Assembly (NCBI RefSeq): GCF_003704095.1
Contig: NW_020845583.1
Span: 186,001 to 250,000 of the forward strand
Reading direction: 5' to 3'
From: Pocillopora damicornis
Lineage: Eukaryota
Length of the DNA: 64,000 bases
Part shown: positions 43,762 through 64,000 of the stretch, in pieces
Numbering within the stretch: position 1 is the first letter of the stretch
Layout of the letters: each line of letters starts with the position of its first letter
Program-made: the position numbers and the translations under genes
Notes under the pieces: generated by a model
Seen by the model: only the letters and a program-made list of their open reading frames with translations
What the model was told of the DNA's origin: nothing
Database searches by the model: none

Positions 43762-45339
43762 GTGGGTGTGCCCGACAAGAATCCTGAAACGCATATAGTT
43801 GCTATGGAGCTGGATGCAGACTTTGTATTTCTTTTCAGGTTTATTTCAATGTCCTTGTATAACGTGTTGCACGACCATTTTTCTTCAGGGACGACTGCGA
43901 AAGTACAGAAATAAGCTTAAAAATTACTTTTTAATTCCAAACAGTCATATTTCGTATATTTTTTTATCACAACTCTAAGGAGAAATTTTTCCGCCGTTTT
44001 TTTCGTTTTATTCACGTAAGAACTTGCATTCAGTGGAGAAATAATCAAATAAATTTTCACTTAATAGAGTTCAAAAACGTACACGAAATACAAAAAAAAA
44101 TCTTAGCCAAGGAACAGTTGGAAGAGTAATGGTGGATCGCAACACTGCATTTTACTTTTTGGATAAAAACGAAACAGGCAGATCCGAATGATTCATAACA
44201 TCGATTATTCAATGGAATATTGCCTGGCTCACGTGAGTGAACGATTCTGATGACGTAATATTGGATAGAAAATTTGAGCTTTTGACTTGCGAGGAAAGCC
44301 TAAAGGAATTAGTGGATTTGGTTGCAGTTGCTAAAGACACTGCCAAAGAGCAACTTATCCCTGCCGAATTACAGGTAGTTAATAGTTTTTTGTGAATTTT
44401 ATATATTTCACCACGCAACATTCTGCTCGTCATGTCAGACATTTATTCCGATGCAATTAACAGTTTTTAAATTGTTTATTTCTTGTAGACAGCGGATTTG
44501 TCCAGTGAAATGGAAGGGTTATTCTTCACTGGCTCACAAATGACCAAATTTACTTTATTTGCCTTATTGGGAATATTTGTCTTCCTATTAGTCATCGGCA
44601 AACTATGGGAAGTCTACACCAACTGTAAGCCAACGGTACGCAAGAAGAGAAAAGGTAACTGAAAGTAGGACCTGAAAAAAACTCAGGCTCGTACGGTTGG
44701 TAGAGCGCTGCACCGGTTTCGCAGAGCTCATGGGTTCAAATCCCGTACGGGCCTGAATTTTCTCAGGTCCTATTTATAACTACTCGTTTCAGTAGTGTTC
44801 TTAGCTGCGAGGATCTCTTAATTTCATTTCTTCACCGCAGTGCAAATATATAATTTCATATATCTAAAATCATCATTCATTACTTGGATGGTTTATTTGG
44901 ACCCAACACAGAGGTCATGGGTTCAATACTTATAAGGCAGTCGGTCTGTCAATCAAATAATAAGTAATTATGTCAGTCCGTTTGTCGGTGAGAAAATAGT
45001 AATTCATTCAAACGATTAATGACCGAATCAAATATCAACTATTTGTGTACTGACAAACGGAAAGACTGAAGTAATATGTTCAAGGATTAATTTTGTGGTT
45101 CATTTCTTAAAATGTCCTCTTCGATCCTTTTAGGACTGATTCCTCGCAGCAGGAAGATGTCCATGATGCGACTCAAAGACATAACGTCTGATCTACAAAA
45201 GTTGAAAGAGGAATTTGAAAGTGCCATGAACGGTTTGTCTCCTGTAGGCATTCCTGAATACTCAAGACCAAAAGAACGCTCATTTTTTATTATGCTTGAT
45301 CAGAAAGGAAAGAGTGAAAATACTGAAACAAAACTATAA
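43762..45339 (+). pseudogene. GluR0-like channel paralog copy 1; only the 3-prime exons found (43762-~43828, 44068-44374, 44489-44654, 45134-45339), frameshifted
   Basis: Exon-by-exon homology to copy 2: VGVPDKNPETHIVAMELDAD, GRVMVDRNTAFYFLDK, RQIRMIHNIDY, LIPAELQ, M4 helix, SDLQKLKEEF. About three frameshifts in 44068-44374 and the donor near 43828 appears lost. No S1 or pore exons found upstream. Confidence 0.8.
44690..44930 (+). repeat. tRNA-Thr-like repeat, second copy
   Basis: gttggtagagcgctgcaccggtttcgcaga...gggttcaaatcccgtac, similar to 5275-5340. Confidence 0.65.
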
Positions 45340-47056
45340 CTCGCTGAAAAAATTTGTCATAAATAGATTCAGATAGCATTTTACTCTTCTGAGATTTCCA
45401 TGGCCAGTGGCATATTTTTAGCTTGAGCAAAAAGAAAAGGTGAATGTGTCACACTGAGTAGGACACGTAACTGACTTATTCTTTTTCATTACGAATTGTA
45501 TTGAATTGTTTTCCTTCCTTATTCCTATTCCCTGTTTAATTTATTTACTTCAGTTTTTAGGCCAACAAACCAATACGTCGTTTTCAGAGAAAGGTAGCAA
45601 GTTAACCAAGAAGGTTTATAAATTTTTCTCATTCCATTGCAATCAGCTTTGGCCGTCTATTGATGAAATAGATTGCACAGTTAACTACAGACTCTACCTC
45701 GTCCGTGCTGACGGATGAACAGAATCGAGGGTTAAGAATAATTACTTTGGTATTAGCTTGCTTAAAGCTTAGACGTTAGATCAAATAGTGTCCACAGAGT
45801 ATTATTTTAGGGACCTTACTCGCACATTACATGATTGGTTCCCTTGACTAAGAATTTTTAGGCTCGCTCTTGTACCATGGAAAAATAGATCGTGTCGCGG
45901 CAAGCAACTACAGGAATGGGAGTCTAATGGGCTGGCAAATTAGAAAAAAAAAAAGATGACGAATCTTGAATCTCGGCTAAAAAATTAGTTACAAGAAAAG
46001 AAGATTTAGTTTAGTCTAACGTTTTGGTTATAGTTCAGTCTTATTCGTTCATTTTTTGAAAGGATTAAGCAAAATGTGACGTCTCAGACTTATAGGAAAT
46101 GAAAAATGAAACGCATGCATAACCTTGAACGTTTCGATCAAAAAGTTACTTCTGCAATATTACGTCTAAAAAATTGAATCAGGATGTTTAAATTCTCTGC
46201 TAGGGGCTTCTGTAAGCCCCCAAGTTTTCCGTGTCTGTATTTGCATAAGCTTGAGTTTCTGGATGACGAGACAATATGTATACCTACCTTATAGAGAATG
46301 GATAATCTTCACCGTATAAGTGGTGTAAGGACTCTTTAATGAAGAATTAAGATATTGTAAAACCATAGAATATTAGGGAAAATTTTGCATAAAGTCTTTT
46401 AGTTTAGTCATTCACGGCCTTAGTTTGGAAACTAGGTAGACTTCTTCCCAAACCCTCACCCCTGTGAGTCCTATTTCAACTAATTGTAAATAAACTGATG
46501 TTTTTTAAATTTCATGTTTGTTAAGGTAACTGGATTCTGGCAAATTTTCATGAAAATCCGATAAATCTATATACCCTGTAAATTCGTTTTAGTAGAGGTA
46601 ACTTGCATAAAAACAAGCCTCGAGTTTTCGTTCTCCAAAGAAATTCACATTTTTCGCATGTCATTGCGGTCAAACCGCCGACCAATGGAACGCGATATCG
46701 ACCCCCTGTTATGTCTCCAGAAGAAAAACTCCGAAATTCACGGGAAAGGTAATTTCGCGAAACGGGGAAAACGAATTTTCGATAGTTCAACGAAGTCCTA
46801 ATGTTCATCCTCAACTGAAGAACATGAAGAAAATTGAGTAAAGCAAGCAAAAGAAAAAAAAATTTGCCTTCTGTTTTCTCGGCCTGGGCTCTCTCACGAC
46901 GATTCTTTTTTTGATGAGGAATGTGATTTGTTAACGTGTTGCGAAATATTACAGAAATTCCCCTTCGTTGTGTGGTGCAAGACGTGATTCAAACAAAATA
47001 TGCAAATAAAAATCCCAGATGAAACCCCGCGGAAAACGTTAACACTGTGCTAACTA

Positions 47057-47266
47057 ACACCCTTTAACTCCCACGATCTCATTAGCAATTCTCCTCACTG
47101 TCTGCCACGTAAATCTTGTGATATTAGTTCGGAGCACTTGGTATTGGATCGACTAATAATCCACTAATTTATATTTTTCTTTATTGTCATTACTTGTCTG
47201 CTTGATTTTGTATTGATAATGTAAGGTGAAATTCTGTCTTGGTTACCCATGGGAGTTAAAGAGTTA
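47057..47266. mobile_element. About 200-bp MITE family with (tt)aacccttt...aaagggtt(aa) termini (piggyBac-like)
   Basis: Related copies at about 1-82, 121-320, 1355-1563, 1993-2200, 2797-3004, 4925-5455 (interrupted), 11739-11940, 14735-14930, 54642-54740 and 59543-59752 share attctcc...ggagaattt...tgtaaggagaaatt cores. Confidence 0.7.
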
Positions 47267-49475
47267 TGACATTCTCTCAGCCATATCTCCCTATTTTCAA
47301 GATTCTGTAATTTTTATTTCCCCAAAAAATCAGACATGACTTCTTTCTTTGACTAAAGAGCGAAAAAACGAAATTCTAATAGTTTTGACCAGATTTTGTT
47401 GATAGTAAGCTTAATATTCGTTTATAATTTTAGTGGAAGTTACGGGTTCTTAGCCCTGACCCAAAAGAAAAGTTAAAAGGAGTTAAGATGAGTGGATAAG
47501 GCCTTAAGAATAATAAATAAATAGATTTACAATTCAAGAGAGTCAAAATCATTTTAGTGGTTAACCAAAAATACCTGAAACAATGGACCAATGAATGATG
47601 GCCATATTTCGTAATCGGCAGCTGCACCCCGTGAGCTGTGAGACTCTTGTTGACTTACAATTGTTCAGCGATCCTTGTCTTTTGTTGAAAGGGAGATTAA
47701 ATTTCACTGCGTTTGATATTTCACACATGTACTTCAGCAAATATATAACTCTTTTACAACTGCAGTAAGTCAAGGTAAGTGGAATCTGGAGCCTTCCTGC
47801 TTTCGATCCCGCGCTCGATCAACACTTCTGGTGATTGAGTCACTATTTTTCAGAGATAATAGTCCGTGCTTTTTATATAAAATGACACAACATATCTTTT
47901 TAAAGAAAGAATATAATGCAAAATTTCTATAGATTTCTTCCCTGTGAAATCCTCAGAGGATTATTACAAATGCACATAAAGAAAAATACAAATATATGCG
48001 TTTGCCTGAAAATCTCGCTACGAATATTTTGAAAATACTTTCAGTACAGTCCTCCGGCACTTCAAGACAGCATAAACATTTTTCCTTTTTTGGTTCCTTT
48101 TTGCAAATTTTTGGTGTTTGCCACTGGTTAAAAAAAGCATCACATTTTTCTATCGCAGCACTGTTAGTAAGCAAAGTTTCATTTATACCAGGAATACAAA
48201 CAATTTATTACCTTTTCCGTTCGTTTTGGCTGTTCGTTATCTTACTCAAGCGATAGTCATTGCTTGTATTCTCAGCAGGACTGCAAATTTGTTTTTCTCG
48301 TATTTTTTACCCAAGCGACGATAAGAGGTGTCAGCAAATTGTAGTCATAATCATTTCAATAAAAATACCAGCCGGCCAGCCGCCATTAGCGCTAAAATAT
48401 ATGTTCTAATGGATCATGTTCCTAACTCTTTAAGATAAAATCTTCGTTCACAGCCGGTATCGTCTTAATTTGCTAGTGAAGGTTTTAATTAACTTGGATT
48501 CGACTCTCCTGTTTTCTGCGTCCAGTGCGAAGTTTTCCCACCTTCAAGCTCTCTTTTCGCATGATTTATGCCGATAGCAGGATTTGGAGGTGAGTATAAC
48601 GTTGCATTATTTAAGACCTGAAATTTTTTCCAGCCATTTTATGCTGTATTTTATTCTTACACTGACCGAACTCCTCGGAATAGACGACTACGAACAAAAT
48701 TTCCACATTCGTTCTTGAGTTGTTCAATTAACATGCAGCATGCAACAATGTTTCGGTCTTTTTTCCTTTTCAAAAAGGTACGTGTTTCCTCGAAATATTG
48801 TATCGTCATCATGGCAATTTATTCATACAATTTCTTTATTGTTTGCAGAAACAATCCTCGTCGAACTTTTGTGAAAAATTGTTTCCAAATTTCTTGAGCT
48901 TTGTCCATTTTATTTGCTCATCCCTCGTGCTTTACGTAGAAATGGCCACATCCCTACCAGTTAAGTCCTGGTGTGAATATTTCGCTTCGATTCAACACTC
49001 CCTTTAAAGACGGTTTTGTTGTGGTAATTTTAATTACACGCTGTAGGGTTGAATTTGCACCTGCCTCCAAGCAAAATAAACCGCTATCCCCGATTTGCAT
49101 TCGTTTACATTACGTTCATGAGGGTATTTTTTCTGCGGCTCATTACTTTTTCTTAACTTGCCGACTTCACTAGTTTCGGTTGCTCAAAAAGAGTAAAAAA
49201 AACAACAGTGAAAAAAAGAAAGCCACTTCCGATTTGCCATTCTCAGGAAACGTGGAAGCAATTTTTGAACTGAAATTTTTCACTAAAAGATGGAACTCTG
49301 AATAATTTATAAACCGGGTAAGAATTTAATAGATCATAAATATTTTAATTGAAAAGAAAACTTTGGAATAAACTAATTCATGAACAACGTAGAAAGCTGT
49401 TTCTTTTCATCTTCGTCTCTGGTTCGGGGACAATTTAAACTTTGACGATAAATTTCTTATTCCGCAGAATTCAAT

Positions 49476-52400
49476 ATGTATAGAGTCACGATTGGATTCA
49501 TTGTAGTTCTGGTTTGCTTCGTTACCTTGCCTGCTGCTAGCTACTCAAGTCATAAATCGAAATTAATCCCTGGGACTCGTGAGATCCGGCAAGAGCGACG
49601 AACGCGTGAAACCCGTCAGGCACATTCTAGCGACACCAAATGCCGATACAAAATAGCTCTTTTGGACGTGCCTCCATATATAATGAACACAGCTAGTAAC
49701 AAGTCAAACAGAGGGTTTATGTACGAACCGCTCATGAAGTCTATAAATGACGAGTGTTTTGATGAAGGAAAGTCAACGGAATCTCATCTGAACTGCTTCC
49801 TGGATCCAATCTTTGTAAGTGACTACGACGAGATGATCAAACTGATTAAAGAAAAGCAAGTGGATTTTGCTTTTCCTATTCTGTCCGACATGAAAGCTAA
49901 GCTGACGACTGAAACCAATGTCACGCTCATCCGAGCATTTGTCTCATCCGGGTGTTCAATGATAGTGAATACAAAGTTATGCGAGCAGGATTCGCGGAAA
50001 CAGTTGATGACTTCCATCACGTCACAGTGGCCGATATTGGCTTGTATCATACTTTTATCAGGAATATCTGGGGTTATCATTTGGCTTTTTGTGAGTATCA
50101 TTGGCCTAGAAAACGTATTTATAATGAATAAACATTTTTAAATGCTGGAAGTTATTGCATACGCAATTTAATTTTTTAGGAAATTTCAAAGCGCTAGAGA
50201 ATTCAATGATTAATTAGTTTAATCTCATGATTGGCCATCTTTGTTCATTAACACTCATAGTGCTTAAACTTATAGAAAAAAACACTCGAAATTAACTTAA
50301 ACTGTCTGAAATCGAAGATTATCGCGAAAGATTTTAATCAGGTAAAAGAAAATTGTGTTCCTGAGATATCGAAACGGTATGAGCGAGCTCGTAGCGCGCA
50401 GCGAAGCCCCATACACAGCAAAATGGAAGTAATGTTATTTTCAGATTTCGGGGTAGGTCGTTATAATTTAAGTAATTTGGCTTGTGGACGGATGTGTAGT
50501 ATTCATTTTAATACCATGCTTTTGTTTTGAATCCCTCAGGAACATAGAGAAAATGAAGAGTATTTTTCACCATCTTTTGCAATTGGATCGCCTCAGGGGT
50601 TCTGGTGGGCAGTGGTATCACTTACAACGGTAGGGTAAGTTATGTTATTTTTCTTTTGTTTAATAAAAAACTTCGCGGGTTAGAGAGCAAAAACACTGGC
50701 GCCACATTGTCATGTGCATTTTCTTCTCAGCGACCAGTCAATATTTATCGCCCTAGGGAGGGGTCGATTATTTATTTTTTTTGGGGGGGGGAGAGGCGGG
50801 GTTGCGTGGTTTCTAGAGGGAATGGGGTGGATATGGGTCGTCGTCAACCGAGTATAACTGACAATGGGGGGGGGGGGTATGGTTATTACAGAGCGTTATG
50901 GGGGTATCAGGTAAATTCTACCTTGACACAACCAAAATCCTCCAAACCCTAACCCCCTCCCCATAGCGAAAAATATTAGTTATTATTAATTCATGGACAA
51001 ATCTCATGTTTTAAGCACGGCTTAAAGATATAAAGACGCCGCTAGCCACCTATTTCGTCGGAAGTGTAAGCTTGCGTTTTTGAACCACGTATCTTTGCTC
51101 TCTCAAGGTTACTTCCCATCTTCGCAGGTGTCCTTCGGGAAAAAAATCGTACGCGCGCAAGTTTTACTAAAGTCCTAGCAAACTATATAGCAGAAGAGAG
51201 CTTAATAACTGCAGTTTACGAAGAAAATATAATTTAAGCGACTTTTATTTTAAGGAAGTGTCAGGAGCCGGTAAGGCGTGAAACGACCGAAGGTTCTTCT
51301 ATTGAATTTATCGGGTATCGGATGCCACAGTTATTCACATGGCATCAATCAACAAAAGTGTGTCAGGCTTCTTCGATATTCTGATTGGTTGTCTAGATGT
51401 CGGCATCTAAAGTCGGAGTTGCTAAAATACGGGAGGTGTGTTGCGTAAATGGAAGCGAAACAATCTCCTGTTTGGAGAACATTAAGTTTGGGAACCTTTA
51501 TGAGCTAAAATCTCGCATTTGATTTTGGGAGGAGTACAACCACTTTGACCGAAGTTATAGGGTATTTAGAGTTGACAAATTTTCGTCAAATTTCGCCGAC
51601 ATCCTAGGAATAATAACAAACGAAAATGTGTCGAAAAATTTTGATATTTGAAATATTTGTCCCATTGCGTCCATTAACGCAACACGACCGGCATATTTTT
51701 AGCTACTTCAACTTTAGATGTCGATATTTAGACAACCGATAAGAATATCTAGAAAGCCTGACACACTTTTGTTGTTTGATGCCTTGATACCGGCTCCTGA
51801 CACTTCCTTAAAAGAAAAGTCGCTTAAATTATATTATTATCGCAAAATACAGTTATTAAGCTTTCTTCAGGTGTATAGTTTGCAAGGATTCTACGAACTA
51901 CAGCGCGTACGAATTTTTCGCGAAGGACACCCGCTAAGGTGTGAAGTAACCTTAAGTCGCAAGCTGCGGGATTGAACAGGTTTAAAAGCGAAGGATAAAA
52001 TTTTCAGGAATGGCTATTCACGTTGAATTTTTCGCTCGAAGCTCCACTATGTCTATGATGAACGTTTTTTTGGTTAAAATAAAAGTGTTACCAATTTTTA
52101 CCCTGAATTCTGTCAAGAATATAAAAACTGTCAGATGGAGCTGCGCTTGTACTCACACCAGAGCTGGATCAAGGGTTTTATGACAGGGGATCCCAAGCTT
52201 TGATTCAGAAAGCACAAATTAAATTCTCTTTTTATAGCAGAACCTAAGATAAGTAAATTTCAACTACTGTTCGTAGTGACATGCGATCCTGACGTTTCAG
52301 TAATTCTGGTTGTAAAAGTACCAAGGTCCAGATCCCTGGATCTTCATTCTGTATCCACCCCTATAAATTAATTTTTGTCTCCCTTTTTAGGTATGGTGAC

Positions 52401-55400
52401 AAAATACCAAGGTCGATTCCTGGACGGTTATTTAGCATAATTTGGATCCTTGTTGGAGCGATATTGTTATCGCTGTTCACTGCCATGGTCACAAATGCTA
52501 TGAACACTGCTCTGGATGGCTCAAAATGCAAAGATATCAGCGGTAAAGAGGTGAGAGTTGTCAAAAGTAAAAAATACGAAGTTGACAGCGTTGTCTGTGT
52601 TATTTCCATAAACCTGGCTTATCAACTCATTTTGATATTTCTATGGATTGATGATAATCTGGTAAATCATGGCCTTTAGGGTGGATGCTAACCTTACACG
52701 GACAAGGATAAGAGTGGTCCCTTCTTTTTGGTAAAGTCCGTCGCACCAATCAAAAACACAAAAATAAAAACACAAAAATAAAAAGCACAAAAGTAACCGT
52801 GGAAAAAACTGATATTGGCGCGCCGCCGCGTGCCTCATCTGCACATTTCCGCGCGCCACGCTATCATCAATTTGTGTTCTTTTGTTCGCTGATATTTTTT
52901 GACTCGTGCGACGGACCTCTCCGAAAAGTGGAGACTGCTTGCAGTCTATGCACAAACTCAAACAAGAAAAAACAAAAAGAAAGAAAAACGAAACATCTCG
53001 CTGCGGGCCACCCCTGAGCGTGTAACATCATGGTCTGAGCTCTCAGACTCGTTCCGAAAGCCTCCATAACTTTCTTCGTAGAATCTATCGCCAGTAATGC
53101 CCTCTTCGCTGACAGTATCACTCCGCAATCTTTCCAGAATCTTCCTAACTGAATACCAACTTATTGTATCTAAATTTTAGGTGTATGAATTGCGAAGTAA
53201 TCACGCAATTCACCCGAAAATATGTGGAGATTCCAAGATGACAGATCAAGTCTTCACCAAGCCCTATTAAGTTTTTTTACGTGCGATTTTAGTGTTGATT
53301 TACCATAATATGTAAGCACTGTTCCTTGAGACCTATCAATTACTGACTATTGCTAAGTGAGTTATCTGATTCATTACTTACTAAGTTCGTCCTTGTAACA
53401 GTGAAAAGGCTAAAGGATGTAGTCGCGTGCAAGGGGGAAAGGTTATGAAAAAAATGAACTCACCCAACACATGCGCAAGAGAAGATAAAAGCTGTTCTTA
53501 TGTAATGTCATTCACCTTAGGTTGGTTTGTTTATCAAAAATACTGATACACAAATTGTGGCAAAGCAGTTCGACGCGAAGATAATTGGTAAGTAACAATT
53601 TTCGCTTATCTATTGACAACATTCCGTTCACAAATAAAATTAATAAATGCCTCTGTCTTCCTTAGTAAATTAACGTGACGATGCCATACTGGATTAACGA
53701 AGATCAGGCATGTGCTCCTGATTCCTGTCTCACCGAAGGATTCAGGGATAGTTCTGATTTCACCCGACTCCGTGGCAATTATTCGTTCCGGGGCACACGC
53801 CAGTATGACTTCCCATTCAAATACAAACGTACACGAACACAGAGCCACGAGAGGGGGGAAGAGGAGGGAGACGGGGAGGGAGAGGGGATTGACTTCACCC
53901 AGACGGGAAAGTCCTCCCATATCATGAGGCCATACCTTACACTAAAAATACATGTCAGTGACACCTCTTCTGACAAACTACCAATTGGATAAAGTCTCAA
54001 AGGTTTTTTAACCTTTTTAAAGCGACCTCCCTTGTGACTGGACTGATCCAGAAATATCTGATATTACAGTGTTGAGAAGCCTGCAAGAGATGCAAGAAAA
54101 ACTCAGCGAAGGAACCATTGGAAGAGTCCTTGTAGATCGAAATACTGCATTTTACTTCCTCGATAAATCCGGACTGAAAAAGAACAGGCAGATACGAATG
54201 ATTCGCAATATCGATTATCCGATGGATTATTACTTGGCGCATGTATACGCGGCACCAGTGAACGTTACAAATGACACCGATCCAGAAATTGTCAAGAGAA
54301 AAAAAGTGGTGGAATGTGGACCAGCATTAAAGGAATATTCCACAGATTTGCGCGTAGAAAGTAAAAAGGCCTCAGGTGCCCTGATACCCGCAGAACTGCA
54401 GGTAGTCTCCTACAACACTTATGAACTAAAGTGGTCAAGAGTAATTGTTGGTACTCATGTCATGTTTTTGATACACGACCATACAAAAGTTTTTTTTTTG
54501 TCGCCATACGGCTTTAACTGGCCGGCTAAATATGAGAGGTTCGTTTTAGGCAACTTTAGCCCTCTGATGATGAAAGAACGCTTGCAAAGTTGCGGAACAC
54601 CTTCTTCTACAGTTATTAGACGCTTTTCTTTAGTCTCTTATCCTTTAACACCCAGAGTCAATTAACAAATAACCTCTCCCTATAATATTCATGCATTACC
54701 TAGCAAACAGGTCATGGAAATACTCAAACTTATCTGGTAGAAGTTGTTAGTATATACCACACAAGTCAATAGTACTTTTCGCGCGCGCTGATTGGCTAAT
54801 TCGGAGGTGAATAACAAGCAGTATTCACCTCTGAGTAGCCCAAGAGACAAATGGCGCGTCACCAACCATTTTTTGTTGTAATGAGGGAAATAAACTAATT
54901 GTTTGTTGTCTGTTCTGGAAAAATGAGAAAAGAAGGATACCTATGGAAAACAAGGACTACCCTTGTCCTTTAAACAACTCTAAGTGGTTGAGTCTATTCT
55001 TCTTTAATGTTTTTTTGTTTTTAGACAACAGCCTTATTTGATCAAATGGATGGTTTATTCTCAAGTGGCTCAGAAATAACCCGGTTTATCTTATTTAGTC
55101 TTCTTGGGATATTCCTCGGACTTGTCATCATTGTGATGGCTTGGGAGGGCTTGAATTCCTGTAATCCTGCGATTCTAAAAAGGAAAGGTAAGTTTAACCC
55201 CTGTTGCAATATTTTGATTCAATTTGTCCTTGTTCTACCATCAACAAACATTGTCATTTTTGGCAGGGCGGGTCAGAGGTTTTCGCGGGAGGAGGGGGGG
55301 GGGAATGCGTAGTTTTCAGGGAGTACGGAGGGAGGACCTATCAGAGCATAAAGGGAGATCATTAGAATTCAACAGAGCCTTACGGAGGATCAGATAAATT

Positions 55401-55740
55401 GTGATGCAACTCAGATCCTCCGAAGTAACTCCCTCCCCGTCCCTAACCCCCAATTTTATGATAGATACTGACGGTTCCTAAATACAATTTGTTTTCCTTA
55501 ATTAGGCTTTGACAGATCCCGCATTTCTTTAATTCTTCAGATATGCGCAAGTGTGACCAAGGAAGCGAAGAAGATAATCCAACCCACTTTAACAGGAAGA
55601 AATTCGTGGCAGAGAATTTTCAGAGTCTTGAAAATAGACTCAGAGAATTATCTAGCGACTTGCAGAAGATTAAAAAAGACTTTGCTGAAGCTCTCTTAAT
55701 CCAGGAAAAAGATGCGCCTCATGAAACACTGCTGCAATAA
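49476..55740 (+). CDS. GluR0/AvGluR1-like ligand-gated channel with K+ selectivity filter, copy 2; 7 coding exons (49476-50090, 50540-50634, 52391-52550, 53521-53587, 54070-54401, 55025-55187, 55541-55740), 543 aa
   Basis: Signal peptide; S1 (IALLDVPPYIM...YDEMIKLIKEKQVDFAFP); M1 (WPILACIILLSGISGVIIWLFE); pore [24 protein letters not shown]; inner helix (IWILVGAILLSLFTAMVTNAM); S2 (DISGKEVG...EMQEKLSEGTIGRVLVDRNTAFYF); M4; C-terminal coiled coil. The 1632 nt spliced frame is intact. Confidence 0.9.
51107..51951. mobile_element. Non-autonomous long-TIR DNA element (Kolobok-like) inserted at TTAA in coding intron 2 of channel copy 2
   Basis: Termini GGTTACTTC...GAAGTAACC with imperfect inverted arms of about 300 bp, flanked by TCAA and TTAA. 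The paralogous site in copy 3 is empty, with a single TTAA at 63651-63654. Confidence 0.85.
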
Positions 55741-56217
55741 GGCGAGAAATTGTAACGTTTAAATAGCTTTATCTTATTTTAGCTCATTCCTATGAGCAGA
55801 GTTTGTAAATTATTAGTAATGACATTCTATCTATATGTTCTTCTGGACGGAAGAATTCATCGTTATGTCATTTGTCACATTTTGACAGCCACCAGACGTT
55901 TTCCATACGTGTTACAGGTAATTTTCGGTTTTAAAAACCCTCTTTTTCAAGTGAGCCAAGCTGCAAATCTGTCTTATGAAAATAAGTTTCATTTAACTTG
56001 TATCATTCTCTAATCAAAGGTCTTGCAGTCATCCATGTTTTAGAGCAGAGGCCTTTGTTACCTCTGACATTTTACAGCAAAGAGGAAAAATTTAACTAGT
56101 CGTTGGTCAAATTGCAATCATTATCATAAATAAGGTAGGTAAGGTCAGCATAAGAAACAGTCGGCTCATTTGTTCTGTGCTTCTACTCTGTCCCCACTTC
56201 GCCTTAGACGTCTTCCA

Positions 56218-56344
56218 ATGGCCTAATGCATGGTCAGTGCACTGGACTCTGGATCGAGAGGTCTGGGTTCGAGACCTGACGGGGTCAATGGGTTGTGTTC
56301 TTGGGCAAGACACTTTTCTCTCCCATGCCTCTTTCCACCTAGGA
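56218..56344 (+). mobile_element. SINE 5-prime portion truncated by the assembly gap
   Basis: tggcctaatg...ctggactctggatcgagaggtctgggttcgagacc...ttgtgttcttgggcaagacac, related to 10853-10950. Confidence 0.65.
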
Positions 56345-56444
56345 NNNNNNNNNNNNNNNNNNNNNNNNNNNNNNNNNNNNNNNNNNNNNNNNNNNNNNNN
56401 NNNNNNNNNNNNNNNNNNNNNNNNNNNNNNNNNNNNNNNNNNNN
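56345..56444. other. Assembly gap (100 N)
   Basis: Run of N. Confidence 1.
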
Positions 56445-56730
56445 GTGAAAGCTACAACTTGTAAAGTAATTAAAGGAATCTTTACTTTTAGTGATCAAGA
56501 AATATACTGATCAATGTATAGTTATAATAACAGGTGAAAAATATATAAAAAAAAAAAGCTTAGACGTTAGATCAAATAGCGTCCACAGCTATTTATTTTA
56601 GGGACCTTACTCCCACACTAGATGATTGGTTCATTTGACTAAGAATTTTTGGGTTCGCTCTTTTGCTATGAACAGATTAATCGTGTCGCAGCAAGCAACT
56701 ACAGGAATGGGCTAACGAATTAGAAGAAAG
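56445..56730 (+). repeat. Third short copy of the duplication-unit start, on a small contig between two gaps
   Basis: Matches 58100-58390 and, from 56557 onward, 45766-45945. Confidence 0.8.
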
Positions 56731-57552
56731 TCATAACTTTACAGTCTTGGCTCAACCTTTAGTTCTAATTTAGTTTTAATTCTTTCGTGAAAATAGCCGC
56801 GGCAGTAAAACATACTCACATATAATAGCTTCTACTACAGCATTAGAATGGAAAGGTTTATAATACAGACCAGATACAGATTTTAAGTCTAATAAACAAA
56901 CGTATTGTACAAAATAACATTACAAAATTATGTCTTGACTATAAAATCGTCTCTGCTTGATGGGTTACAATTATGTTACCATCATTTTGGAGGGAGCAGC
57001 GCGCCGTGCAAGGGAAGCTCCGCTATTACACAATTATCTAGCTGCGAAGTGAACTGGAAAATATAATAGCATGTATCGGTTAACCGAACAAAAACTAGTA
57101 AAAAAAAAAATCATTTAAGTAATTAAATTTTCAAATAACATCAAATGATCTTATCTAGACCAATTTACAATAACAAAAATAATAACTCTAATGGTTGATT
57201 GGCCCAGAAAACTTTAGCTATCCTCTCAACCTAGCGGATGCAAAACTAATAGCAACTGCAACTTGCTCATTCCCATTTTTCCTGCTTTTGAAGCAGTTTG
57301 CTTGTTTTCACTTTGAGTTCTCTTTGGTTAATGATAATGTAAAGTTTTCTTCTGATTGGTTGCTTTAATAACTTTGGTTTTGTTTTTCAACTCTCAGAAC
57401 ATAACTCCTCTATGTACAACGTATCAATCATAAGAGTCAACACTTGACTTTGTTAGGGATACAGCAAAAATCCCCAGCTATACAATAATTTTACAAGGTT
57501 AAAACTGGCCTTCCTTGCCTCCATAGTCCAGGAAATTGACCCACCCAGCCTG

Positions 57553-57652
57553 NNNNNNNNNNNNNNNNNNNNNNNNNNNNNNNNNNNNNNNNNNNNNNNN
57601 NNNNNNNNNNNNNNNNNNNNNNNNNNNNNNNNNNNNNNNNNNNNNNNNNNNN
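57553..57652. other. Assembly gap (100 N)
   Basis: Run of N. Confidence 1.
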
Positions 57653-58220
57653 TAAGGTATAATATAACAATAATTGTTTCTTGACCTCTCTTCGCTTCGT
57701 TAGACGAATGCAAGTGTAATTTCAGGCTGGTCGCTTTCTCAATTTCTTTCGCAAGAAGCACGAGATTTTATAACATTTCAGGAGACTTTTGGAATCACTA
57801 ACTTTTAAGATTATGGAGGGCAGATGCAAGTGGTCACCGAAGACTCTCGGTTAAAAGTTAAGCCTAGAGCATGCATAATAAACTCTGATTATAGGAGAAT
57901 AACGGCCAGCCTAGTACCATTGTTTATTTACAGGCAATAAACTCCAATCCAGGTGATGTCTCTCTGAGAAATGCATCCCTGTTTTGCACTTGAATCTTGC
58001 ACCGTAATCGATAATTTTTTCGTGTATCTATAAATATATTTTTTAATTCAGGCAAGACTGTATATAGAAGCATATTTTTGTAACGTCAGATATGCCACAA
58101 GTGAAAGCTAAATGATGTTTACGACTTGTAAAGTAATCATAGGAATCTTTACTTTTAGTGATCAAGACCTATACTGACTAAGGTATAGTTATAATCCCAG
58201 GTGAAAAAAAAAAAAAAAAA

Positions 58221-61200
58221 AGCTTAGACGTTAGATCAAATAGTGTCCACAGCGAATTATTTTAGGGACCTTACTCGCACACTAGATAATTTGTTCCCTT
58301 GAATAAGAATTTTTTAGGCTCGCTCTTGTACCATGAACAAATTAATCGCGTCGCGGCAAGCAACTACAGGAATGGGCTGACAAATTAGAAAAAAAAAGAT
58401 AAAGAATCTTAAATCTCGGCCAAAAAATTAGTTACAAGAAAAGAAGGTTTGGTTTAGTTTAAGGTTTTGATATTCAGTCTTATTTAATCCTTGTTTGAAA
58501 AAATTGAACAAAATGTGATGTCTCAGACTTCTAAAAAATTAAAAAAGAAACTCATAACCCCTAACGTCTCGATCAAAAAGTAAGATAATGATAATTGCTT
58601 GGCAAAATTACTTCTGCAGACATTTAATTAGGATGTTTAAATTCTCTGCCAGGGGTCTCTGTGAGCCCCAAAGTTTTCCGTGTCTGTATTTGCATAAGCT
58701 TGAGTTTCATGATGACGCGACAATATATATACCTACCAGAGGATGGATAATCTTCATTGTATAAGTGGTGTAAGGAATCTTTAATGAAGAATTAAAGATA
58801 TTATAAAACTGTAGAATATTAGGGACAATTTTGTATAAAGTCTTTTAGTTTTAGTCATTCACGGGCTTAGTTTGGACACTATTTAGACTTCTTCCCCAAC
58901 CCTCACCCCTGTGAATCTTATTTCAAGTAATTGTAAATAAACTGGTGTTTTTGAATTTTCATGTTTGTTAAGGTTACTGGATTCTGGCCAATTTTCATGA
59001 AAATCCAACAAATCTACATACCCTGTAAATTCGTTTAAGTAGAGGTAACTTGCGTAAAAACAAACCTCGAGCTTTCGTTCTCTAAAGAAATTCTCAGTTT
59101 TCGCCTGTCATTGCGGTCACACCGCCGACCAATGGAACGCGACATCGATTCCCTGCTATGTGTCTAGACGAAAAACTCCTAAATTCGCGGGAAAGGTAAT
59201 TTCACAAGACGGGGAAAATGAATTTTCGATGGTTTAACGAAGTCCTAATGTTCATCCTCAAAGAACATAAAGAAAAGTGAGTAAAGCAAGGTAAGGAAAA
59301 AATAATTTGCCTTCTGTTTTCTCGGCCTGGGCTCTCTCACGACGATTCCTTTTTTGTTGAGGAATCTGATTTATTAACATATTGCGAAATGTTACAGATT
59401 GCCCTCCGTTGTGTTGTGCAAGACGCCATTCAAACAAAATATGCAAATAAAAATTCCGGACGAAACCCCGTGGAAAACGTTGACACTGTGCTTGAGGCCT
59501 CTCCGGTTATGACACCTTTCACTCTTCGGTAAAGGTTCCCTTTACCCTTTAACTCCCTCGATCTAATTAGCAATTCTCCTCACTCTCTACCATATAAATC
59601 TTGTGATATCAGTTCGGAGCACTTTGGTATCGGATCGACTAATGATCCCCCAATTGATATTTTTCTTTATTCTCATCACTTGTCTGCATGATATTGTATT
59701 GATGATGTAAGGAGAATTTATGTCTTGGTCACCCATGGGAGTAATGGGTTAAGACATTCTCTCAGCCACATCTCCCTTTTATTTCAAGATTTTGTAATTT
59801 TCATGTCCCTTAAAACTAGAATTGACTGCTTTCTTTGACTAAAGAGCGAAAAAACGAAATTCTAATAGTTTTGACCAGATTTTGTTGATAGTAAGCTGAG
59901 TATTCGTTTATATGATTTTAGTGGAAGTTACGAGTTGCTAGCCCTGACCCAAAAGAAAAGTAAAAGGAGAATCCTACAAGAGTTAAGATGAGTGGATAGG
60001 GCCTTAAGAATAATAAATAAATAGATGGACAATTCTAATTCGAGAGTCAAAATCATTTTTGTGGTTAACCAAAAATATCTGAAACAATGGACCAATGAAT
60101 GATGTCCACATTTCGTAATCGGCAGCTGCACCCCGTGAGCTGTGAGGACTCTTGTTGACTTACAATTGTTCAGCGATTCTTGTCTTTTGTTAAAAGGGAG
60201 ATTAAATTTCACTGCGTTTGATATTTCACACAACCTGTACTTCAACAAATATATAACTCTTTTACAACTGCAGTAAGTCAAGGTAGGTGGAATCTGGAGC
60301 CTTCCTGCTTTCGATCCCGAGTCGAGTCGCTATTTTGCCGAGATAATAGTCTGAGTTGTTTATAAAAAATGACTCAACTTATCTCTTTAAAGAACGAATA
60401 TAGTGCAAAATTTGTATAGATTTCTTCCCCGTGAAATCCTCAGAGGATTACCAAAAATGTATCTGAAGAAAAGCACAAATATATGCATTTGCCTGAAATC
60501 TCGCTACGAATATTTTGAAAATGATTACTTTCAAAGCGGTTCACCGACACTTCAAGACAGCACAAACATTTTTCCTTTTTTGATTCCTTTATGCAAATTT
60601 CTGGTGTTTGTCACTGGTTAAAAAAAGCATCACATTTTTCTTTCGCAACACTCTTAGTAAGCAATTTTCATTTCTACTAGGAATACAAATAATTTATTAC
60701 CTTATTTTTCGTCCGTTTTGGCTGTTCGTTATCTCATAAGCGATAGTCATTGTTTGTATTCTCAGCGGGACTGTAAATTGTTTTCTTTCTTTTTTATTTT
60801 TTACCCAAGCGACGATAAGAGGTGGCAGCAAATTGTAGTCAGAATCATTTCCATAAAAATACCAGCTGACTTACCGCCATCAGCGCTATAATATATGCTC
60901 TAATGGATCATGTTCCTAACTCTTTAAGATACAATCTTAGTTCACAGTCTTTATCGTCTTAATTTGCTAGTGGAGGTTCTTATTAACTTGGATTCGACTC
61001 TCCTGTTTTCTGCTTCCAATGCGAAGTTTTCCCACCTTCAAGCTCTCTTGTCGCATGATTTATACCGATAGCAGGAATTGGAGGTGAGTATAACGTTGCA
61101 TTATTTAAAACGTGAAATTTTTTCCAGCAATTTTAAGTTGTATTTTACTCTAACACTGACTAAATACCTTGGAACACAAGACCACGGACAGAATTTCCAC

Positions 61201-63940
61201 ATTCGTTCTTGAGTTGTTCGATTTGCGTGCAGAATGTAACAATTTTTCGGTCTTTTTTCCTTTTCAAAAAGGTACGTGTTTCCTCGAAATATTGCATCGT
61301 CATCATGGCAATTTATTCATACAATTTCTTTATTGTTTGTAGAAAACAATCCTCATCGAGTTTTTTGAAAAATTGTTTCCAAATTTATTGAGATTTGTCC
61401 ATTTTATTTGCTCATCTCTCGTGCTTTACGTAGAAATAGCGACTTCCCTACCAGTTAAGTCCTGGTGTGAATGTTTCGCTTCGATTCAACCCTCCCATTG
61501 AAGATGGTATTGTTGTGGTAATTTTCAGTACACACTGTAGAGTTGAATTTGCACCTGCCTCCTAGCATAGTAAGCTGCTATCCCCGATTTGCATTCGTTT
61601 CATCTTTTTAAACATGAACATTACATTCATATGGGTATTTTTTTTTGCGGCTCATTATTTTTTCACGAGGTTCGACCGTTCGGGTACGGCGGTTTGCACT
61701 TTGTCTTGAGATTCTTGGCAAAGGATTTTTGAGACATTGTTTTCTCTCTTTGATATAACAACTGCCATTTAAAATTTCCCCTGGACATGTCTTAATAGCT
61801 CGCTGACTTCACTTCTTTCAATCGCTTCAAAACAGTAGAAAAAAATTCGACGGTAAAAAATAAAGTCATTTCCGATTTGCCATTCTCAGGAAACGTTGAA
61901 GCAATTTCTGAACTGCAATTTTTCACTAAAAGATGGAACTCTGAATAATTTTTCGACCGGTACGAATCTAATAGATTATAAATATTTCAATTGAAAAGAA
62001 AACTTTGTAATAGACTAATTTATGAATTACGTAGTAAGCTGTTTCTTTCCTTCTTGGTCTCAGGCTTGAGGACAAATTAAACTTTGACTATAAATTTCTT
62101 CGTCCGCAGAATTCAATATGTTCAGAGTCACGATTGGATTCATCTTAGTTCTGGTTTGCTTCGTTACCTTGCCCGCTATTAGTTATTCAAGTCATAAATC
62201 GAAATTAGTCCGTCGGGCCCGTGAGATCAGGCAAGAGCGACAAACGCGTGAACTCCGTCAGGCGCATTCTAACGACACCAAATGCCGATACAAAATGGCT
62301 CTTTTGGACGTGCCTCCATATATAATGAACACAGCTAATAACAAGTCAAATAGAGGGATTCTGTACGATACGCTCAAGTACGCTGTAAATCACGCTTGTT
62401 TTAAAGAAGAAACGTACACGGAATCTCATCTGAAATGCTTCCAGGATCCAATATCTGTAGGTAACTACGACGAGATGATCAAACTGATTAAAGAAAAGCA
62501 AGTGGATTTTGCTTTTCCTATTCGGTCCGACATGAAAGCTAAGCTGACGACTGAAACCAATGTCACGCTCATCCGGGCATTTGTCTCATCCGGGTGTTCA
62601 TTGATAGTGAATACAAAGTTATGCGAGCAGGATTCTCGGAAACAGTTGATGACTTCCATCACGTCACAATGGCCGATATTGGCTTGTATCATACTTTTGT
62701 CAGGAATATCTGGGGTTATCATTTGGCTTTTTGTGAGTATCAGTGGCCTAGAAAAACGTATTAATAATGCATAAACATTTTTAAATGCTGACAACTATTG
62801 AATAAGCAATTAATTTTTTTAAGTCGAGTCGATAAATTCAATTACTCCAGAGCATAAGAGATGTAAATGATGAATCATCCCTAACCCTAATCTCATATTT
62901 GGTCATCTTTATTCATTAACACTCATAGTGCTTAAAATTATAGAAAAAACTGTCAAAATTAGCTTAAATTATCTGAAATCGAAATTTATCGCGAAAGATT
63001 TTAATCAGGTGAAAGATAATTGTGCTCCTGAGATATCGAAACGCTATGAGCGAGCTCGTAGCGCGCGTGCAGCGAAGCCCCATACACATAAAAATGGAGG
63101 TAATGTTATTTCAAGACTTCGAGGTAGGTCGTTGTAATTTAAGTAATTTGGCTTGTGGACGGACGTGTAATATTCATTTTAATAGCGTGCTTTTGTTTTG
63201 AATCCCTTAGGAACATAGAGCAAATGAAACGTACTTTTCACCATCGTTTACAATTGGATCGCCTCAGGGGTTCTGGTGGGCAGTGGTATCACTTACAACA
63301 GTAGGGTAAGTTATCGTATTTTTCTTTTGTGTGAAAAAAAAAGCTTTGCGGGTTTGTGAGCAAAAATACAGACGCCACATTTGCCATGTGTTTTTTCGGG
63401 CGGGGGAAAGGGAGTTATAATTATTATAGAGCCTTATGAGGGGACCAGGTAAATTCTACCGTGACATAACCAAAATTCTCCAAACCCTACCCCCTCCCTT
63501 CAGAGATAAACCTTGACGGCCTTATTAGTTATGATCAATTCCCATGAATCTCACGTTTTAAGTACGGCTTAACTTAATAAAAAGATGCCGCAAGCCATCT
63601 AATTCGTTGGAAGTGTATGCTTGCGTTTTGAATCACATATCTTTACTCTCTTAAGTCCTAAGCTACAAGATTGCACAGGTTCAAAAGCGAGGGCTGAAAT
63701 TCTCAGGAATGGCTATTCACGTTGATTTGTTTCACCCGAAGCTCCACCAGGTCAATGATGAACGTATTTTTTCTGGTTAAAATAGAATTTTTACCAAGTT
63801 TTACACTTAATTCTGTCATGAATGTAAAGACTGTCAGGTAGGGTTACGCTTGTACTCACACCAAAGCTGGATCAAGGGTTTTATGACAGGGGATCACAAA
63901 CTTTGATTCAGAAAGCACAAATTAAATTCTCTTTTTATAT
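58221..63940 (+). repeat. Tandem segmental duplication unit B (copy 3)
   Basis: Colinear with 45766-52240, including the shared MITE (47057 vs 59543) and the UTR donor ttggag|gtgagt (48590 vs 61084). Confidence 0.9.
62118..63305 (+). CDS. GluR0-like channel copy 3, first two coding exons (62118-62732, 63211-63305); continues beyond the window
   Basis: Same exon lengths (615 and 95 nt) and splice sites as copy 2; exon 2 ends FWWAVVSLTTVG. Confidence 0.88.
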
Positions 63941-64000
63941 TAAAACCTAATAAATACAAGCTTAAAGATATTTCAAGCTAAGTAAATTTCAGTTACCAAA

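What the first reader, a model, noticed from the sequence alone, without database searches (positions are those of the whole stretch)
43762..64000. Tandem array of at least three GluR0-like channel genes showing birth-and-death evolution
Seen: an older frameshifted copy (43762-45339), a complete copy and a recent duplicate, all on the + strand. About 6 kb of upstream, exon and intron sequence is duplicated with the gene. Inference: local expansion with pseudogenisation is typical of chemosensory receptor families such as insect IRs, so this could be an undescribed chemoreceptor repertoire.
Basis: partly seen in the sequence, partly recalled or inferred. Interest (0 to 1): 0.75.

Follow-up and report, generated by a model that had tools for sequence, protein, structure and literature searches.

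The report
Coral potassium-filter receptor-channel gene cluster
This stretch of a stony-coral genome holds a real cluster of duplicated genes, some intact and some decayed, for small glutamate-receptor-shaped ion channels that keep a potassium-channel filter, but nothing yet shows that they are smell or taste receptors.

Summary
The window is Pocillopora damicornis scaffold C2218. It carries one complete 7-exon, 543-codon gene (copy 2, 49476-55740). A second copy (copy 3) starts at 62118 and is intact wherever it can be read. A decayed fragment (psi1) lies at 42931-45662. The next 50 kb of the scaffold holds three more loci, in both orientations.

Copies 2 and 3 lie in a duplicated block, 45764-55897 versus 58219-66921, with about 10% substitutions and many indels outside the exons. 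The 511 comparable codons have no indel; dS is 0.14 and dN/dS 0.50. Copy 3 is 99.2% identical to a P. verrucosa protein, copy 2 only 87%. Two of two DNA runs hold both forms. They are paralogues, not haplotypes.

psi1 is not an older copy of that pair. It is a 5'-truncated duplicate of the other subfamily, with +2, -10 and -29 nt indels in exon 5.

The proteins have a glutamate-receptor LBD-TMD fold without an amino-terminal domain and a TTVGYGD filter. The genome holds about 50 such loci. A chemosensory role is untested, and they are not insect-type IRs. The scan found this family before on other DNA of this genome (s1-771494).

The parts
42714..42834 (-). Isolated, inverted relic of the pore/M3 exon (exon 3), with two stops and a frameshift. 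No other exons of that copy were found upstream.
   Evidence: tblastn
42931..45662 (+). psi1: 5'-truncated pseudogene of subfamily B. Homology to copies 4, 5 and 6 starts inside intron 3 and includes introns and the 3' flank.
   Evidence: blastn, (89.6% of aligned bases identical to copy 6, 17 gap openings)
43762..43827 (+). psi1 exon 4 remnant
44069..44374 (+). psi1 exon 5 remnant, with +2, -10, -29 and -3 nt indels relative to copy 6 and stops in frame
   Evidence: An RNA contig of a paralogue carries 10 extra nt behind 44165.
44489..44650 (+). psi1 exon 6 remnant (M4 helix), open
44696..44910 (.). High-copy dispersed repeat inserted in psi1 intron 6
   Evidence: tables 2, 5c and 7
45133..45339 (+). 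psi1 exon 7 remnant with an 8-codon in-frame deletion, ending at its stop
   Evidence: table 4
45764..55897 (+). Duplicated block, first unit (upstream region plus all of copy 2)
48588..49465 (+). Intron in the 5' untranslated region (GT..AG), seen as a joint in RNA contigs of two polyA runs
   Evidence: table 5
49476..50090 (+). Copy 2 exon 1: signal peptide, S1 lobe, M1 helix
49701..49835 (+). Fast-evolving patch in S1 (codons 76-120): 22 non-synonymous against 3 synonymous differences between copies 2 and 3
50540..50634 (+). Copy 2 exon 2: pore helix and first half of the filter (ends ...TTVG)
52391..52550 (+). Copy 2 exon 3: YGD of the filter, inner helix (M3), start of S2
53521..53587 (+). 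Copy 2 exon 4 (S2)
54070..54401 (+). Copy 2 exon 5 (S2)
55025..55187 (+). Copy 2 exon 6 (M4 helix)
55541..55740 (+). Copy 2 exon 7 (cytoplasmic tail and stop codon)
56345..56444 (.). Assembly gap (N) in the spacer between genes; not filled
56445..57552 (.). Small contig between the gaps. 56453-56729 resembles the start of the copy-3 unit. 56735-57550 is an inverted match to the flank downstream of copy 3. It is probably mis-oriented in the scaffold.
57553..57652 (.). Assembly gap (N) in the spacer between genes; not filled
58219..64000 (+). Duplicated block, second unit (upstream region and 5' part of copy 3). It continues to about 66921 beyond the window.
62118..62732 (+). Copy 3 exon 1
63211..63305 (+). 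Copy 3 exon 2 (pore helix, ...TTVG)

Best explanation
This is a genuine multigene cluster in Pocillopora damicornis that evolves by tandem duplication, divergence and decay. The genes encode subunits with the ligand-binding clamshell and the M1-pore-M3-M4 layout of ionotropic glutamate receptors. They have no amino-terminal domain, and they keep a potassium-channel selectivity filter (TTVGYGD).

Shown: copies 2 and 3 are separate loci (paralogues) produced by duplication of a unit of about 12.4 kb. The duplication predates the split of P. damicornis from P. verrucosa. Both copies have kept their reading frames, and copy 3 is transcribed and spliced. psi1 arose as a partial copy of a gene of the other subfamily. 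It lacks exons 1-3 and has since gained frame-breaking indels. Three more loci follow on the same scaffold.

Inferred: the products assemble as tetramers and open a K+-selective pore when an unknown extracellular ligand closes the clamshell, which would hyperpolarise the cell. The fast-changing patch in the S1 lobe, which also appears swapped between the copy-2 and copy-3 types in other samples, is where ligand or partner specificity diversifies.
For: Identity of the genome.

Gene model: splice sites were read directly. The P. verrucosa RefSeq protein XP_066018878 (543 aa) has the same exon junction pattern.

Duplication. About 10% of aligned bases differ in the 3.5 kb upstream, with 38 gap openings. 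The 511 comparable codons have no indel.

Selection: dS 0.140, dN 0.070, omega 0.50. Omega is 0.15 over codons 121-205 of exon 1 (end of S1 plus M1).

Not haplotypes:
- Copy 3 matches P. verrucosa XP_066018192 at 507 of 511 residues; copy 2 matches it at 471 of 540.
- In the exon-1 tree, copy 3 groups with the P. verrucosa genes (support 93/99) and copy 2 groups with another set of sequences (99/98).
- In 2 of 2 DNA runs from two studies, a contig with 0-2 differences and a contig 9-12% different lie on the same places (table 8).
- A 1-kb piece of the shared upstream region (46000-47000) has no near-identical twin elsewhere in the assembly.

Expression: two polyA RNA runs show the joint 48587->49466 (GT..AG). 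Their contigs over 49466-49660 carry 21 differences, which is exactly the number separating copy 3 from copy 2 there.

psi1.

Larger array.

Fold: the best PDB matches are GluA/GluN LBD-TMD chains, E about 3e-12, with 453-500 aligned columns. The model has mean pLDDT 71.

Pore: K+ channels are the best sequence matches. Pfam finds Ion_trans_2 and Lig_chan.

Family size: 50 places match a profile of the first exon.
Against: Adjacency of copies 2 and 3 rests on scaffolding across two N gaps, and the contig between them looks mis-oriented.

No raw reads were available, so copy number from read depth could not be measured.

The P. verrucosa proteins I saw include two copy-3-type genes but no full-length copy-2-type gene. 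The copy-2 lineage outside this assembly is seen only in short metagenome ORFs and Logan contigs.

The listed RNA contigs that match copy 2 itself (1-3 differences) are unspliced (records 12 and 13 in X17, 18 and 19 in X19). Expression of copy 2 is therefore not shown.

Part of exon 3 of copy 3 lies in an N gap outside the window, so its integrity is not fully known.

A pairwise omega of 0.5 cannot show that each copy is constrained. That argument rests on the absence of indels and on similar branch lengths.

Channel function, K+ selectivity and ligand gating are all inferred. No Pfam ligand-binding family matches. In alignment A1 the arginine that bacterial GluR0-type proteins carry in their conserved RE motif has no clear counterpart.
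Confidence: 0.85

Rival explanations
1. Copies 2 and 3 are uncollapsed haplotypes of one locus that the scaffolder placed one behind the other.
For: Copy 3 sits on its own contigs, separated from copy 2 by two N gaps. The small contig between them seems mis-oriented. Other samples hold mosaic exon-1 forms of the 2-3-2 and 3-2-3 types. Recombination between alleles would also produce such forms.
Against: Divergence is about 10% in substitutions plus about one indel per 90 bp outside the exons, and dS is 0.14. Copy 3 is 99.2% identical to a P. verrucosa protein and copy 2 only 87%, so the split is far older than the species. Both forms lie on the same places in 2 of 2 DNA runs from different studies. 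Homology stops at 45764 / 58219: 57653-58119 has no match to what precedes 45764. Relatives carry several family genes on one chromosome.
Confidence: 0.04
2. The cluster is part of an external chemoreceptor repertoire, working like insect IRs or other fast-turnover receptor families.
For: About 50 loci match the first-exon profile, many in clusters, and 13 of the 50 have stops inside the match. The extracellular S1 patch has 22 non-synonymous against 3 synonymous differences, significantly richer in non-synonymous changes than the rest of the gene (Fisher p = 0.009). The patch takes many states and appears swapped among population sequences. The family seems narrowly distributed: only 48 proteins of 1.84 billion match exon 1 at E <= 0.001.
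Against: There are no data on cell type or ligand. The filter predicts a K+ current, which would silence a cell rather than excite it. dN/dS above 1 in the patch is not significant by itself (p = 0.41). Transmitter receptors and immune-type receptors can show the same family dynamics. The family is not related to IRs beyond the shared superfamily fold.
Confidence: 0.25
3. Both copies are real paralogues in this chromosomal region, but the scaffold's order, spacing or orientation is wrong, so the neat 12.4-kb head-to-tail unit is partly an assembly construct.
For: The scaffold downstream (64-95 kb in extended coordinates) is broken by more than 40 N runs. The contig 56445-57552 carries an inverted match to the flank of copy 3 and a third copy of the 275-bp element that starts the unit.
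Against: If that small contig is flipped, the flank after copy 2 matches the flank after copy 3, as a tandem unit would predict. The 275-bp element occurs only at this locus in the whole assembly.
Confidence: 0.12

Closest known systems
GluR0 of Synechocystis and bacterial SBP_bac_3 + Lig_chan + Ion_trans_2 proteins
   Same: Both have no amino-terminal domain, a clamshell split by the channel, and a K+-channel filter of the TXVGYG type. After the coral proteins and Nematostella P0022, bacterial proteins of this type are the next-best sequence matches, at E about 1e-18. GluR0 is described as K+-selective and glutamate-gated in passages I read in PMC12332018 and PMC12226733.
   Different: The coral proteins have a signal peptide, a fourth membrane helix (M4) and a cytoplasmic tail. 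Their genes have introns. Their clamshell matches no Pfam binding-protein family. The ligand is unknown.
[quoted passage not shown] 2011)
   Same: It is an animal iGluR-type subunit that keeps the K+ filter signature. This is stated in passages of PMC12332018 and PMC3483616.
   Different: That review describes AvGluR1 as having the full eukaryotic iGluR architecture. The coral proteins lack the amino-terminal domain and form a family of about 50 loci. I did not compare the sequences, because AvGluR1 was not among the proteins returned.
Eukaryotic AMPA/kainate/NMDA receptors (LBD-TMD part)
   Same: They are the best fold matches over 453-500 aligned columns, covering clamshell, M1, pore loop, M3 and M4.
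   Different: Sequence identity is 12-15%. There is no amino-terminal domain. The SYTANLAAF motif is not kept (the M3 exon reads SLFTAMVTNAM). The pore has a K+ filter instead of a Q/R/N-site pore.
Insect and protostome ionotropic receptors (IRs)
   Same: Both are iGluR-fold subunits. From recall, most IRs also lack an amino-terminal domain and the family evolves by tandem duplication and pseudogenisation.
   Different: From recall, IRs derive from AKDF-type iGluRs of protostomes and carry non-selective cation pores. Here the filter is of the K+ type and the nearest sequences are cnidarian and then bacterial. Sensory expression is untested.

Membership tests
Ionotropic glutamate receptor superfamily (fold level) | Two-lobed ligand-binding clamshell (S1/S2) interrupted by the channel segment M1-pore loop-M3 | tested here: met
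   The AlphaFold model of the P. verrucosa orthologue of copy 3 (pLDDT 71) has GluA/GluN LBD-TMD chains as best PDB matches, at E about 3e-12. The exon order S1-M1 / pore / M3-S2 / S2 / S2 / M4 was read in the window.
Ionotropic glutamate receptor superfamily (fold level) | Pfam Lig_chan (PF00060) above its gathering score | tested here: met
   Relatives P0004, P0022 and P0042 score 33.5-40.1 bits against a cut-off of 30.8. Ion_trans_2 scores higher.
Eukaryotic iGluRs (AKDF, NMDA, epsilon) | SYTANLAAF gate motif in M3 and a non-K+ pore loop | tested here: not met
   M3 reads SLFTAMVTNAM and the pore loop reads TTVGYGD.
Eukaryotic iGluRs (AKDF, NMDA, epsilon) | Amino-terminal domain before S1 | tested here: not met
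   Exon 1 goes from the signal peptide, after about 55 residues, straight into S1.
GluR0-type prokaryotic receptors | K+-channel filter signature TXVGYG | tested here: met
   The filter is split over exons 2 and 3 in copy 2. The exon-2 half is seen in copy 3. Both halves are seen in copy 6. Copy 5 shows the end of exon 2 (after an N gap) and the exon-3 half.
GluR0-type prokaryotic receptors | Only two membrane helices around the pore (no M4) | tested here: not met
   An M4 helix is encoded by exon 6 and modelled as a helix at residues 440-478.
GluR0-type prokaryotic receptors | Amino-acid binding site with the conserved arginine of the S1 lobe | tested here: inconclusive
   In alignment A1 the bacterial RE motif falls opposite a gap or lysine-rich stretch of the coral proteins. 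The alignment is weak there (20-24% identity).
Insect-type ionotropic receptors (IRs) | Descent from protostome AKDF iGluRs | not tested
   No tree with IRs was built. Indirect evidence only: the nearest sequences outside corals were Nematostella P0022 and then bacterial GluR0-type proteins.
Insect-type ionotropic receptors (IRs) | Expression in chemosensory neurons | not testable with these tools
   Only bulk RNA contigs were available. Supplements of cell-atlas papers are closed.
Birth-and-death multigene family | Tandem paralogues of different ages together with pseudogenes at one locus | tested here: met
   dS between copies 2 and 3 is 0.14. dS between subfamilies A and B is about 2 (saturated). 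psi1 is truncated and frameshifted. An exon-3 relic is present.

The most novel reading that the evidence does not exclude
The array is one arm of a repertoire of about 50 genes, found in several anthozoans, for ligand-gated potassium channels. These would act as hyperpolarising receptors for external or internal chemical signals. New specificities would arise by tandem duplication and by swapping a short patch of the ligand-binding lobe between neighbouring paralogues.
Probability: 0.2. Interest if true: 0.85.

Novelty: new variant of a known kind. Interest (0 to 1): 0.6.

Why it matters
In the passages I read, AvGluR1 of a rotifer is the one animal iGluR named as keeping the potassium-channel filter. 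A family of about 50 loci in a reef coral, with an intact filter and no amino-terminal domain, would be plentiful natural material for asking how glutamate receptors arose from a binding protein joined to a K+ pore. It would also let one ask whether animals use ligand-gated K+ channels for fast inhibition or for sensing. This locus shows the family is still turning over, with young paralogues, a partial duplicate and relics. It also marks a short extracellular patch as the place to look for ligand specificity. Practically, the public gene models here are incomplete. The model of copy 3 (XP_027045918, 259 aa) stops after the exon-2 pore helix and ends in letters unlike the relatives' exon 3, part of which lies in an N gap. 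Model pdam_00010497 skips M1.

Tried and rejected
Pfam on single exons gave almost nothing. The only hit to a ligand-binding family was Lig_chan-Glu_bd at E 0.038. PDB sequence searches with exon 1 and with the S2 open frame gave no meaningful match. The fold search on a relative's model was needed to place the clamshell.

I looked for the missing 5' exons of psi1, and for more exons of the inverted relic, with motif scans and with tblastn of copy-2 exons and of two P. verrucosa proteins. None were found in the window. A weak hit at 33737-33895 (E 0.002-0.004) was treated as chance.

I wanted read depth, but all 24 listed runs are kept as contigs, so depth was not used as copy number, as itself warns.

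I considered whether the 275-bp element at the start of the unit is a transposon that mediated the duplication. It occurs only at this locus, so I rejected that.

Literature searches for a description of this family found none. I read only passages of PMC12226733, PMC12332018, PMC3483616 and PMC13648236. Their supplementary sequence lists are closed and could contain members of this family. Janovjak et al. 2011 and Chen et al. 1999 were seen only as citations and in others' descriptions.

The spliced protein of copy 2 or copy 3 was never joined. Every search, count and tree used single exons, and dN/dS counts were summed exon by exon. The fold used the natural P. verrucosa protein P0190 in an alignment of database proteins.
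Full report
WHERE WE ARE. The window is G000:C2218:186001-250000 of a 234-Mb assembly in 4393 contigs. A protein search returned 'pdam_00010497 [Pocillopora damicornis]' on a 399,661-bp contig, the length of C2218. It also returned XP_027045918 (LOC113673696) of the same species.

THE COMPLETE GENE (COPY 2). Reading the DNA, and comparing copies at about 60% protein identity so that only exons stand out, gives seven coding exons:
- Exon 1, 49476-50090: signal peptide, S1 lobe, M1.
- Exon 2, 50540-50634: pore helix, ending ...TTVG plus two bases.
- Exon 3, 52391-52550: completes G, then YGD, the inner helix and the start of S2.
- Exons 4 and 5, 53521-53587 and 54070-54401: S2.
- Exon 6, 55025-55187: M4.
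- Exon 7, 55541-55740: tail and stop.
All introns are GT..AG, the phases fit, and the sum is 1629 coding bases, or 543 codons. The P. verrucosa RefSeq protein XP_066018878 is 543 aa long and reads straight across every junction I inferred. RNA contigs add an untranslated upstream exon, spliced 48587->49466.

WHAT THE PROTEIN IS. The pore exon matches K+ channels best: TOK1 and Kv4 at E 7e-4 to 0.04, with GluA2 only at E 2.4. Full-length relatives hit Pfam Ion_trans_2, Ion_trans and Lig_chan but no binding-protein family. I built an AlphaFold model of the P. verrucosa orthologue from a 27-row alignment (mean pLDDT 71, pTM 0.53). Its best PDB matches are AMPA- and NMDA-receptor LBD-TMD chains, with E about 3e-12, probability 1.00, 453-500 aligned columns and 12-15% identity. 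The architecture is thus that of a glutamate receptor without an amino-terminal domain, with an M4 helix and an intact K+ filter. The SYTANLAAF motif is not kept. In alignment A1 the arginine-bearing RE motif of bacterial GluR0-type proteins has no clear counterpart. That leaves the ligand open. The next-best sequence relatives after the corals and Nematostella are bacterial SBP_bac_3 + Lig_chan + Ion_trans_2 proteins. Channel function and K+ selectivity are inferred, not shown.

THE DUPLICATE (COPY 3). The matching block is 45764-55897 versus 58219-66921. In the 3.5 kb upstream, 90.3% of aligned bases are identical, with 38 gap openings. Introns are 85-88% identical. Every visible exon of copy 3 has the same length and the same splice sites as in copy 2. 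Exon 3 is cut after 24 codons by an N gap just outside the window (64191-64290 in extended coordinates), so its remainder cannot be judged.

Over the 511 comparable codons dS is 0.140, dN is 0.070 and omega is 0.50. Omega is 0.15 over codons 121-205 of exon 1 (end of S1 plus M1). At the non-coding indel density of about one per 90 bp, some 17 indels would be expected in 1533 coding bases, and none is seen. Branch lengths of the two lineages in the exon-1 tree are similar (0.078 and 0.10). Both copies therefore look constrained.

PARALOGUES OR HAPLOTYPES? The scan's program asked for the gaps to be tested first. Both window gaps lie in the spacer after copy 2's stop codon. No exon crosses them, so frame is not an issue, but copy 3 does sit on separate contigs. 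The contig between the gaps (56445-57552) has two parts. One is a 277-bp copy of the start of the copy-3 unit. The other is an inverted match to 66983-68026, the flank downstream of copy 3. Flipped, it would give copy 2 the same downstream flank as copy 3, so it is probably mis-oriented.

Five things speak against haplotypes:
- The divergence given above is large.
- Homology ends at 45764 / 58219, and 57653-58119 matches nothing before 45764.
- Neither unit has a near-identical twin elsewhere in the assembly.
- Copy 3 is 507/511 identical to P. verrucosa XP_066018192 while copy 2 is 471/540. In the tree copy 3 groups with the P. verrucosa genes at 93/99 and copy 2 with another sequence set at 99/98.
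- In both DNA runs laid (X1 and X2, from two studies), a contig with 0-2 differences and one with 9-12% differences lie on the same places: 46230-46890 in both runs, 47782-48487 in X2, and 49212-49660 (X1) or 49279-49660 (X2) (table 8).

All runs are kept as contigs, so depth cannot serve as copy number, and with only two samples the test is weak on its own. I put the haplotype reading at about 4%.

EXPRESSION. Two polyA RNA runs (X17, X19) carry the spliced joint 48587->49466. Their listed contigs over 49466-49660 differ from copy 2 at 21 places. The alignment gives the same count between copy 3 and copy 2 over that stretch, so these are copy-3 transcripts. The listed contigs that match copy 2 itself are unspliced and could be pre-mRNA or DNA carry-over. 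Each run has two contigs with the joint, and the second may be copy 2, but it was not listed. Over psi1 all RNA contigs are variant forms with GT..AG joints at 44372->44487 and 44652->45132. These are transcripts of intact B-type paralogues, not of psi1. Contigs drop rare variants, so silence of psi1 is not proven.

THE DECAYED COPY (psi1). Homology at the DNA level, introns included, runs from 42931 to 45662. It is with copies 4, 5 and 6 of the other subfamily, not with copies 2 and 3. Identity of aligned bases is 89.6% to copy 6 and 88-89% to copy 5, but only 78-79% to copies 2 and 3, over the best 179 bases. Homology starts inside intron 3, so exons 1-3 are missing.

Relative to copy 6, exon 5 has +2, -10, -29 and -3 nt indels, which bring stops into frame. 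Exon 7 has lost eight codons in frame. A high-copy repeat sits in intron 6. psi1 is about as diverged from its source lineage as copies 2 and 3 are from each other, so 'older' is not supported. Just upstream, at 42714-42834 on the minus strand, lies a lone exon-3 relic with two stops and a frameshift. It is closest in wording to the C-type protein P0192. No further exons of that copy were found.

THE ARRAY IS LARGER. On the next 50 kb of the scaffold tblastn finds three more loci:
- Copy 4 (-), as fragments between N runs at about 73.4-76.0 kb.
- Copy 5 (+), at 77.1-80.8 kb, with exons 2-6 open.
- Copy 6 (-), at 95.0-99.9 kb, with all seven exons open.
Coordinates continue from the window. Copies 5 and 6 differ by dS 0.17 with omega 0.27. 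Subfamilies A and B differ by dS of about 2. That part of the scaffold has more than 40 N runs, so its order is uncertain.

THE FAMILY. Exon 1 finds only 48 proteins at E <= 0.001 among 1.84 billion representatives. Named ones come from Acropora, Nematostella and Actinostola. A full-length search adds Montipora, Oculina, Stylophora, Desmophyllum, P. verrucosa and P. meandrina, often with several genes on one scaffold. In P. damicornis a profile of the first exon matches 50 places, clustered on contigs such as C2502, C2563, C2688, C629 and C374. Of these, 13 of 50 have stops inside the match. The pore exon matches 48 places, largely on the same contigs. I did not inspect those other loci, so some stops may be introns. 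The A/B split predates the divergence of Pocillopora and Stylophora. The copy-2/copy-3 split is younger than that but older than the P. damicornis / P. verrucosa split.

A PATCH THAT CHANGES AND MOVES. Codons 76-120 of exon 1 carry 22 non-synonymous and 3 synonymous differences between copies 2 and 3, while the rest of the gene carries 58 and 40. The contrast is significant (Fisher p = 0.009). dN/dS above 1 in the patch alone is not (p = 0.41).

Among exon-1 ORFs from other samples, some have copy-2 ends with a copy-3 patch: P0058, a cluster of 111 sequences, plus P0284, P0286 and P0288. One has the reverse arrangement: P0059, a cluster of 23. The breakpoints are shared. This looks like gene conversion between the paralogues. 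The ORFs come from short-read metagenome assemblies that I could not inspect, so chimeras are not excluded.

THE CHEMORECEPTOR IDEA. The family dynamics resemble those of chemoreceptor families, and the variable patch is extracellular. That is all the support there is. No cell-type data or ligand could be tested. The pore predicts a hyperpolarising current. The family is not an IR family. I give an external chemosensory role about 25%.

LITERATURE. Eight searches found no paper describing this cnidarian family. Passages of two recent iGluR surveys (PMC12226733, PMC13648236) treat the cnidarian AKDF, NMDA and epsilon receptors only. GluR0 and AvGluR1 are the named precedents for a K+ filter in an iGluR. 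Earlier notes of this scan describe the same family on another piece of this genome (s1-771494, s1-771493) and this same gene (s1-772997). They agree with what I found.

VERDICT. This is a real, still-evolving tandem cluster of an undescribed but already database-annotated anthozoan family of K+-filter, glutamate-receptor-shaped channels. Birth-and-death evolution is supported. The haplotype artefact is very unlikely. The chemoreceptor role is open.

Noticed in passing
window 47059-47266 and 44696-44910: Two short dispersed repeats with very high contig depth in all four runs laid, with many loose ends at their borders. They are probably miniature transposons. One sits in psi1 intron 6, the other in the upstream region of copy 2.
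   Followed up: partly
window 51102-51287 versus 51771-51956: An inverted repeat of about 186 bp (84% of aligned bases identical) inside intron 2 of copy 2. Copy 3's intron 2 is about 950 bp shorter, so this may be an insertion specific to copy 2.
   Followed up: no
extended coordinates 77147-77179 (C2218:263147-263179), copy 5: Copy 5 and two P. verrucosa proteins (P0186, P0189) carry glutamate in place of valine in the pore helix just before the filter (WWAVE instead of WWAVV). This could change conduction.
   Followed up: no
P0189 (P. verrucosa XP_066018611): This protein is B-type in exons 1-3 and A-type in exons 4-7. It is either a real chimeric gene from unequal crossing-over or a gene model that merges neighbours.
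   Followed up: no
window 62118-63305 and beyond (public models of copy 3): The P. damicornis models XP_027045918 (259 aa) and pdam_00010497 (121 aa) are truncated or skip M1. The first stops after the exon-2 pore helix and ends in letters unlike the relatives' exon 3, part of which lies in an N gap.
   Followed up: partly
window 46535-47000: A dispersed repeat with about 35 partial copies on other contigs at 66-88% identity.
   Followed up: no
G000 contigs C2502 (462-499 kb), C2563 (73-104 kb), C2688 (49-76 kb), C629, C374: Further tandem clusters of the same superfamily, several with stops inside the first-exon match.
   Followed up: no
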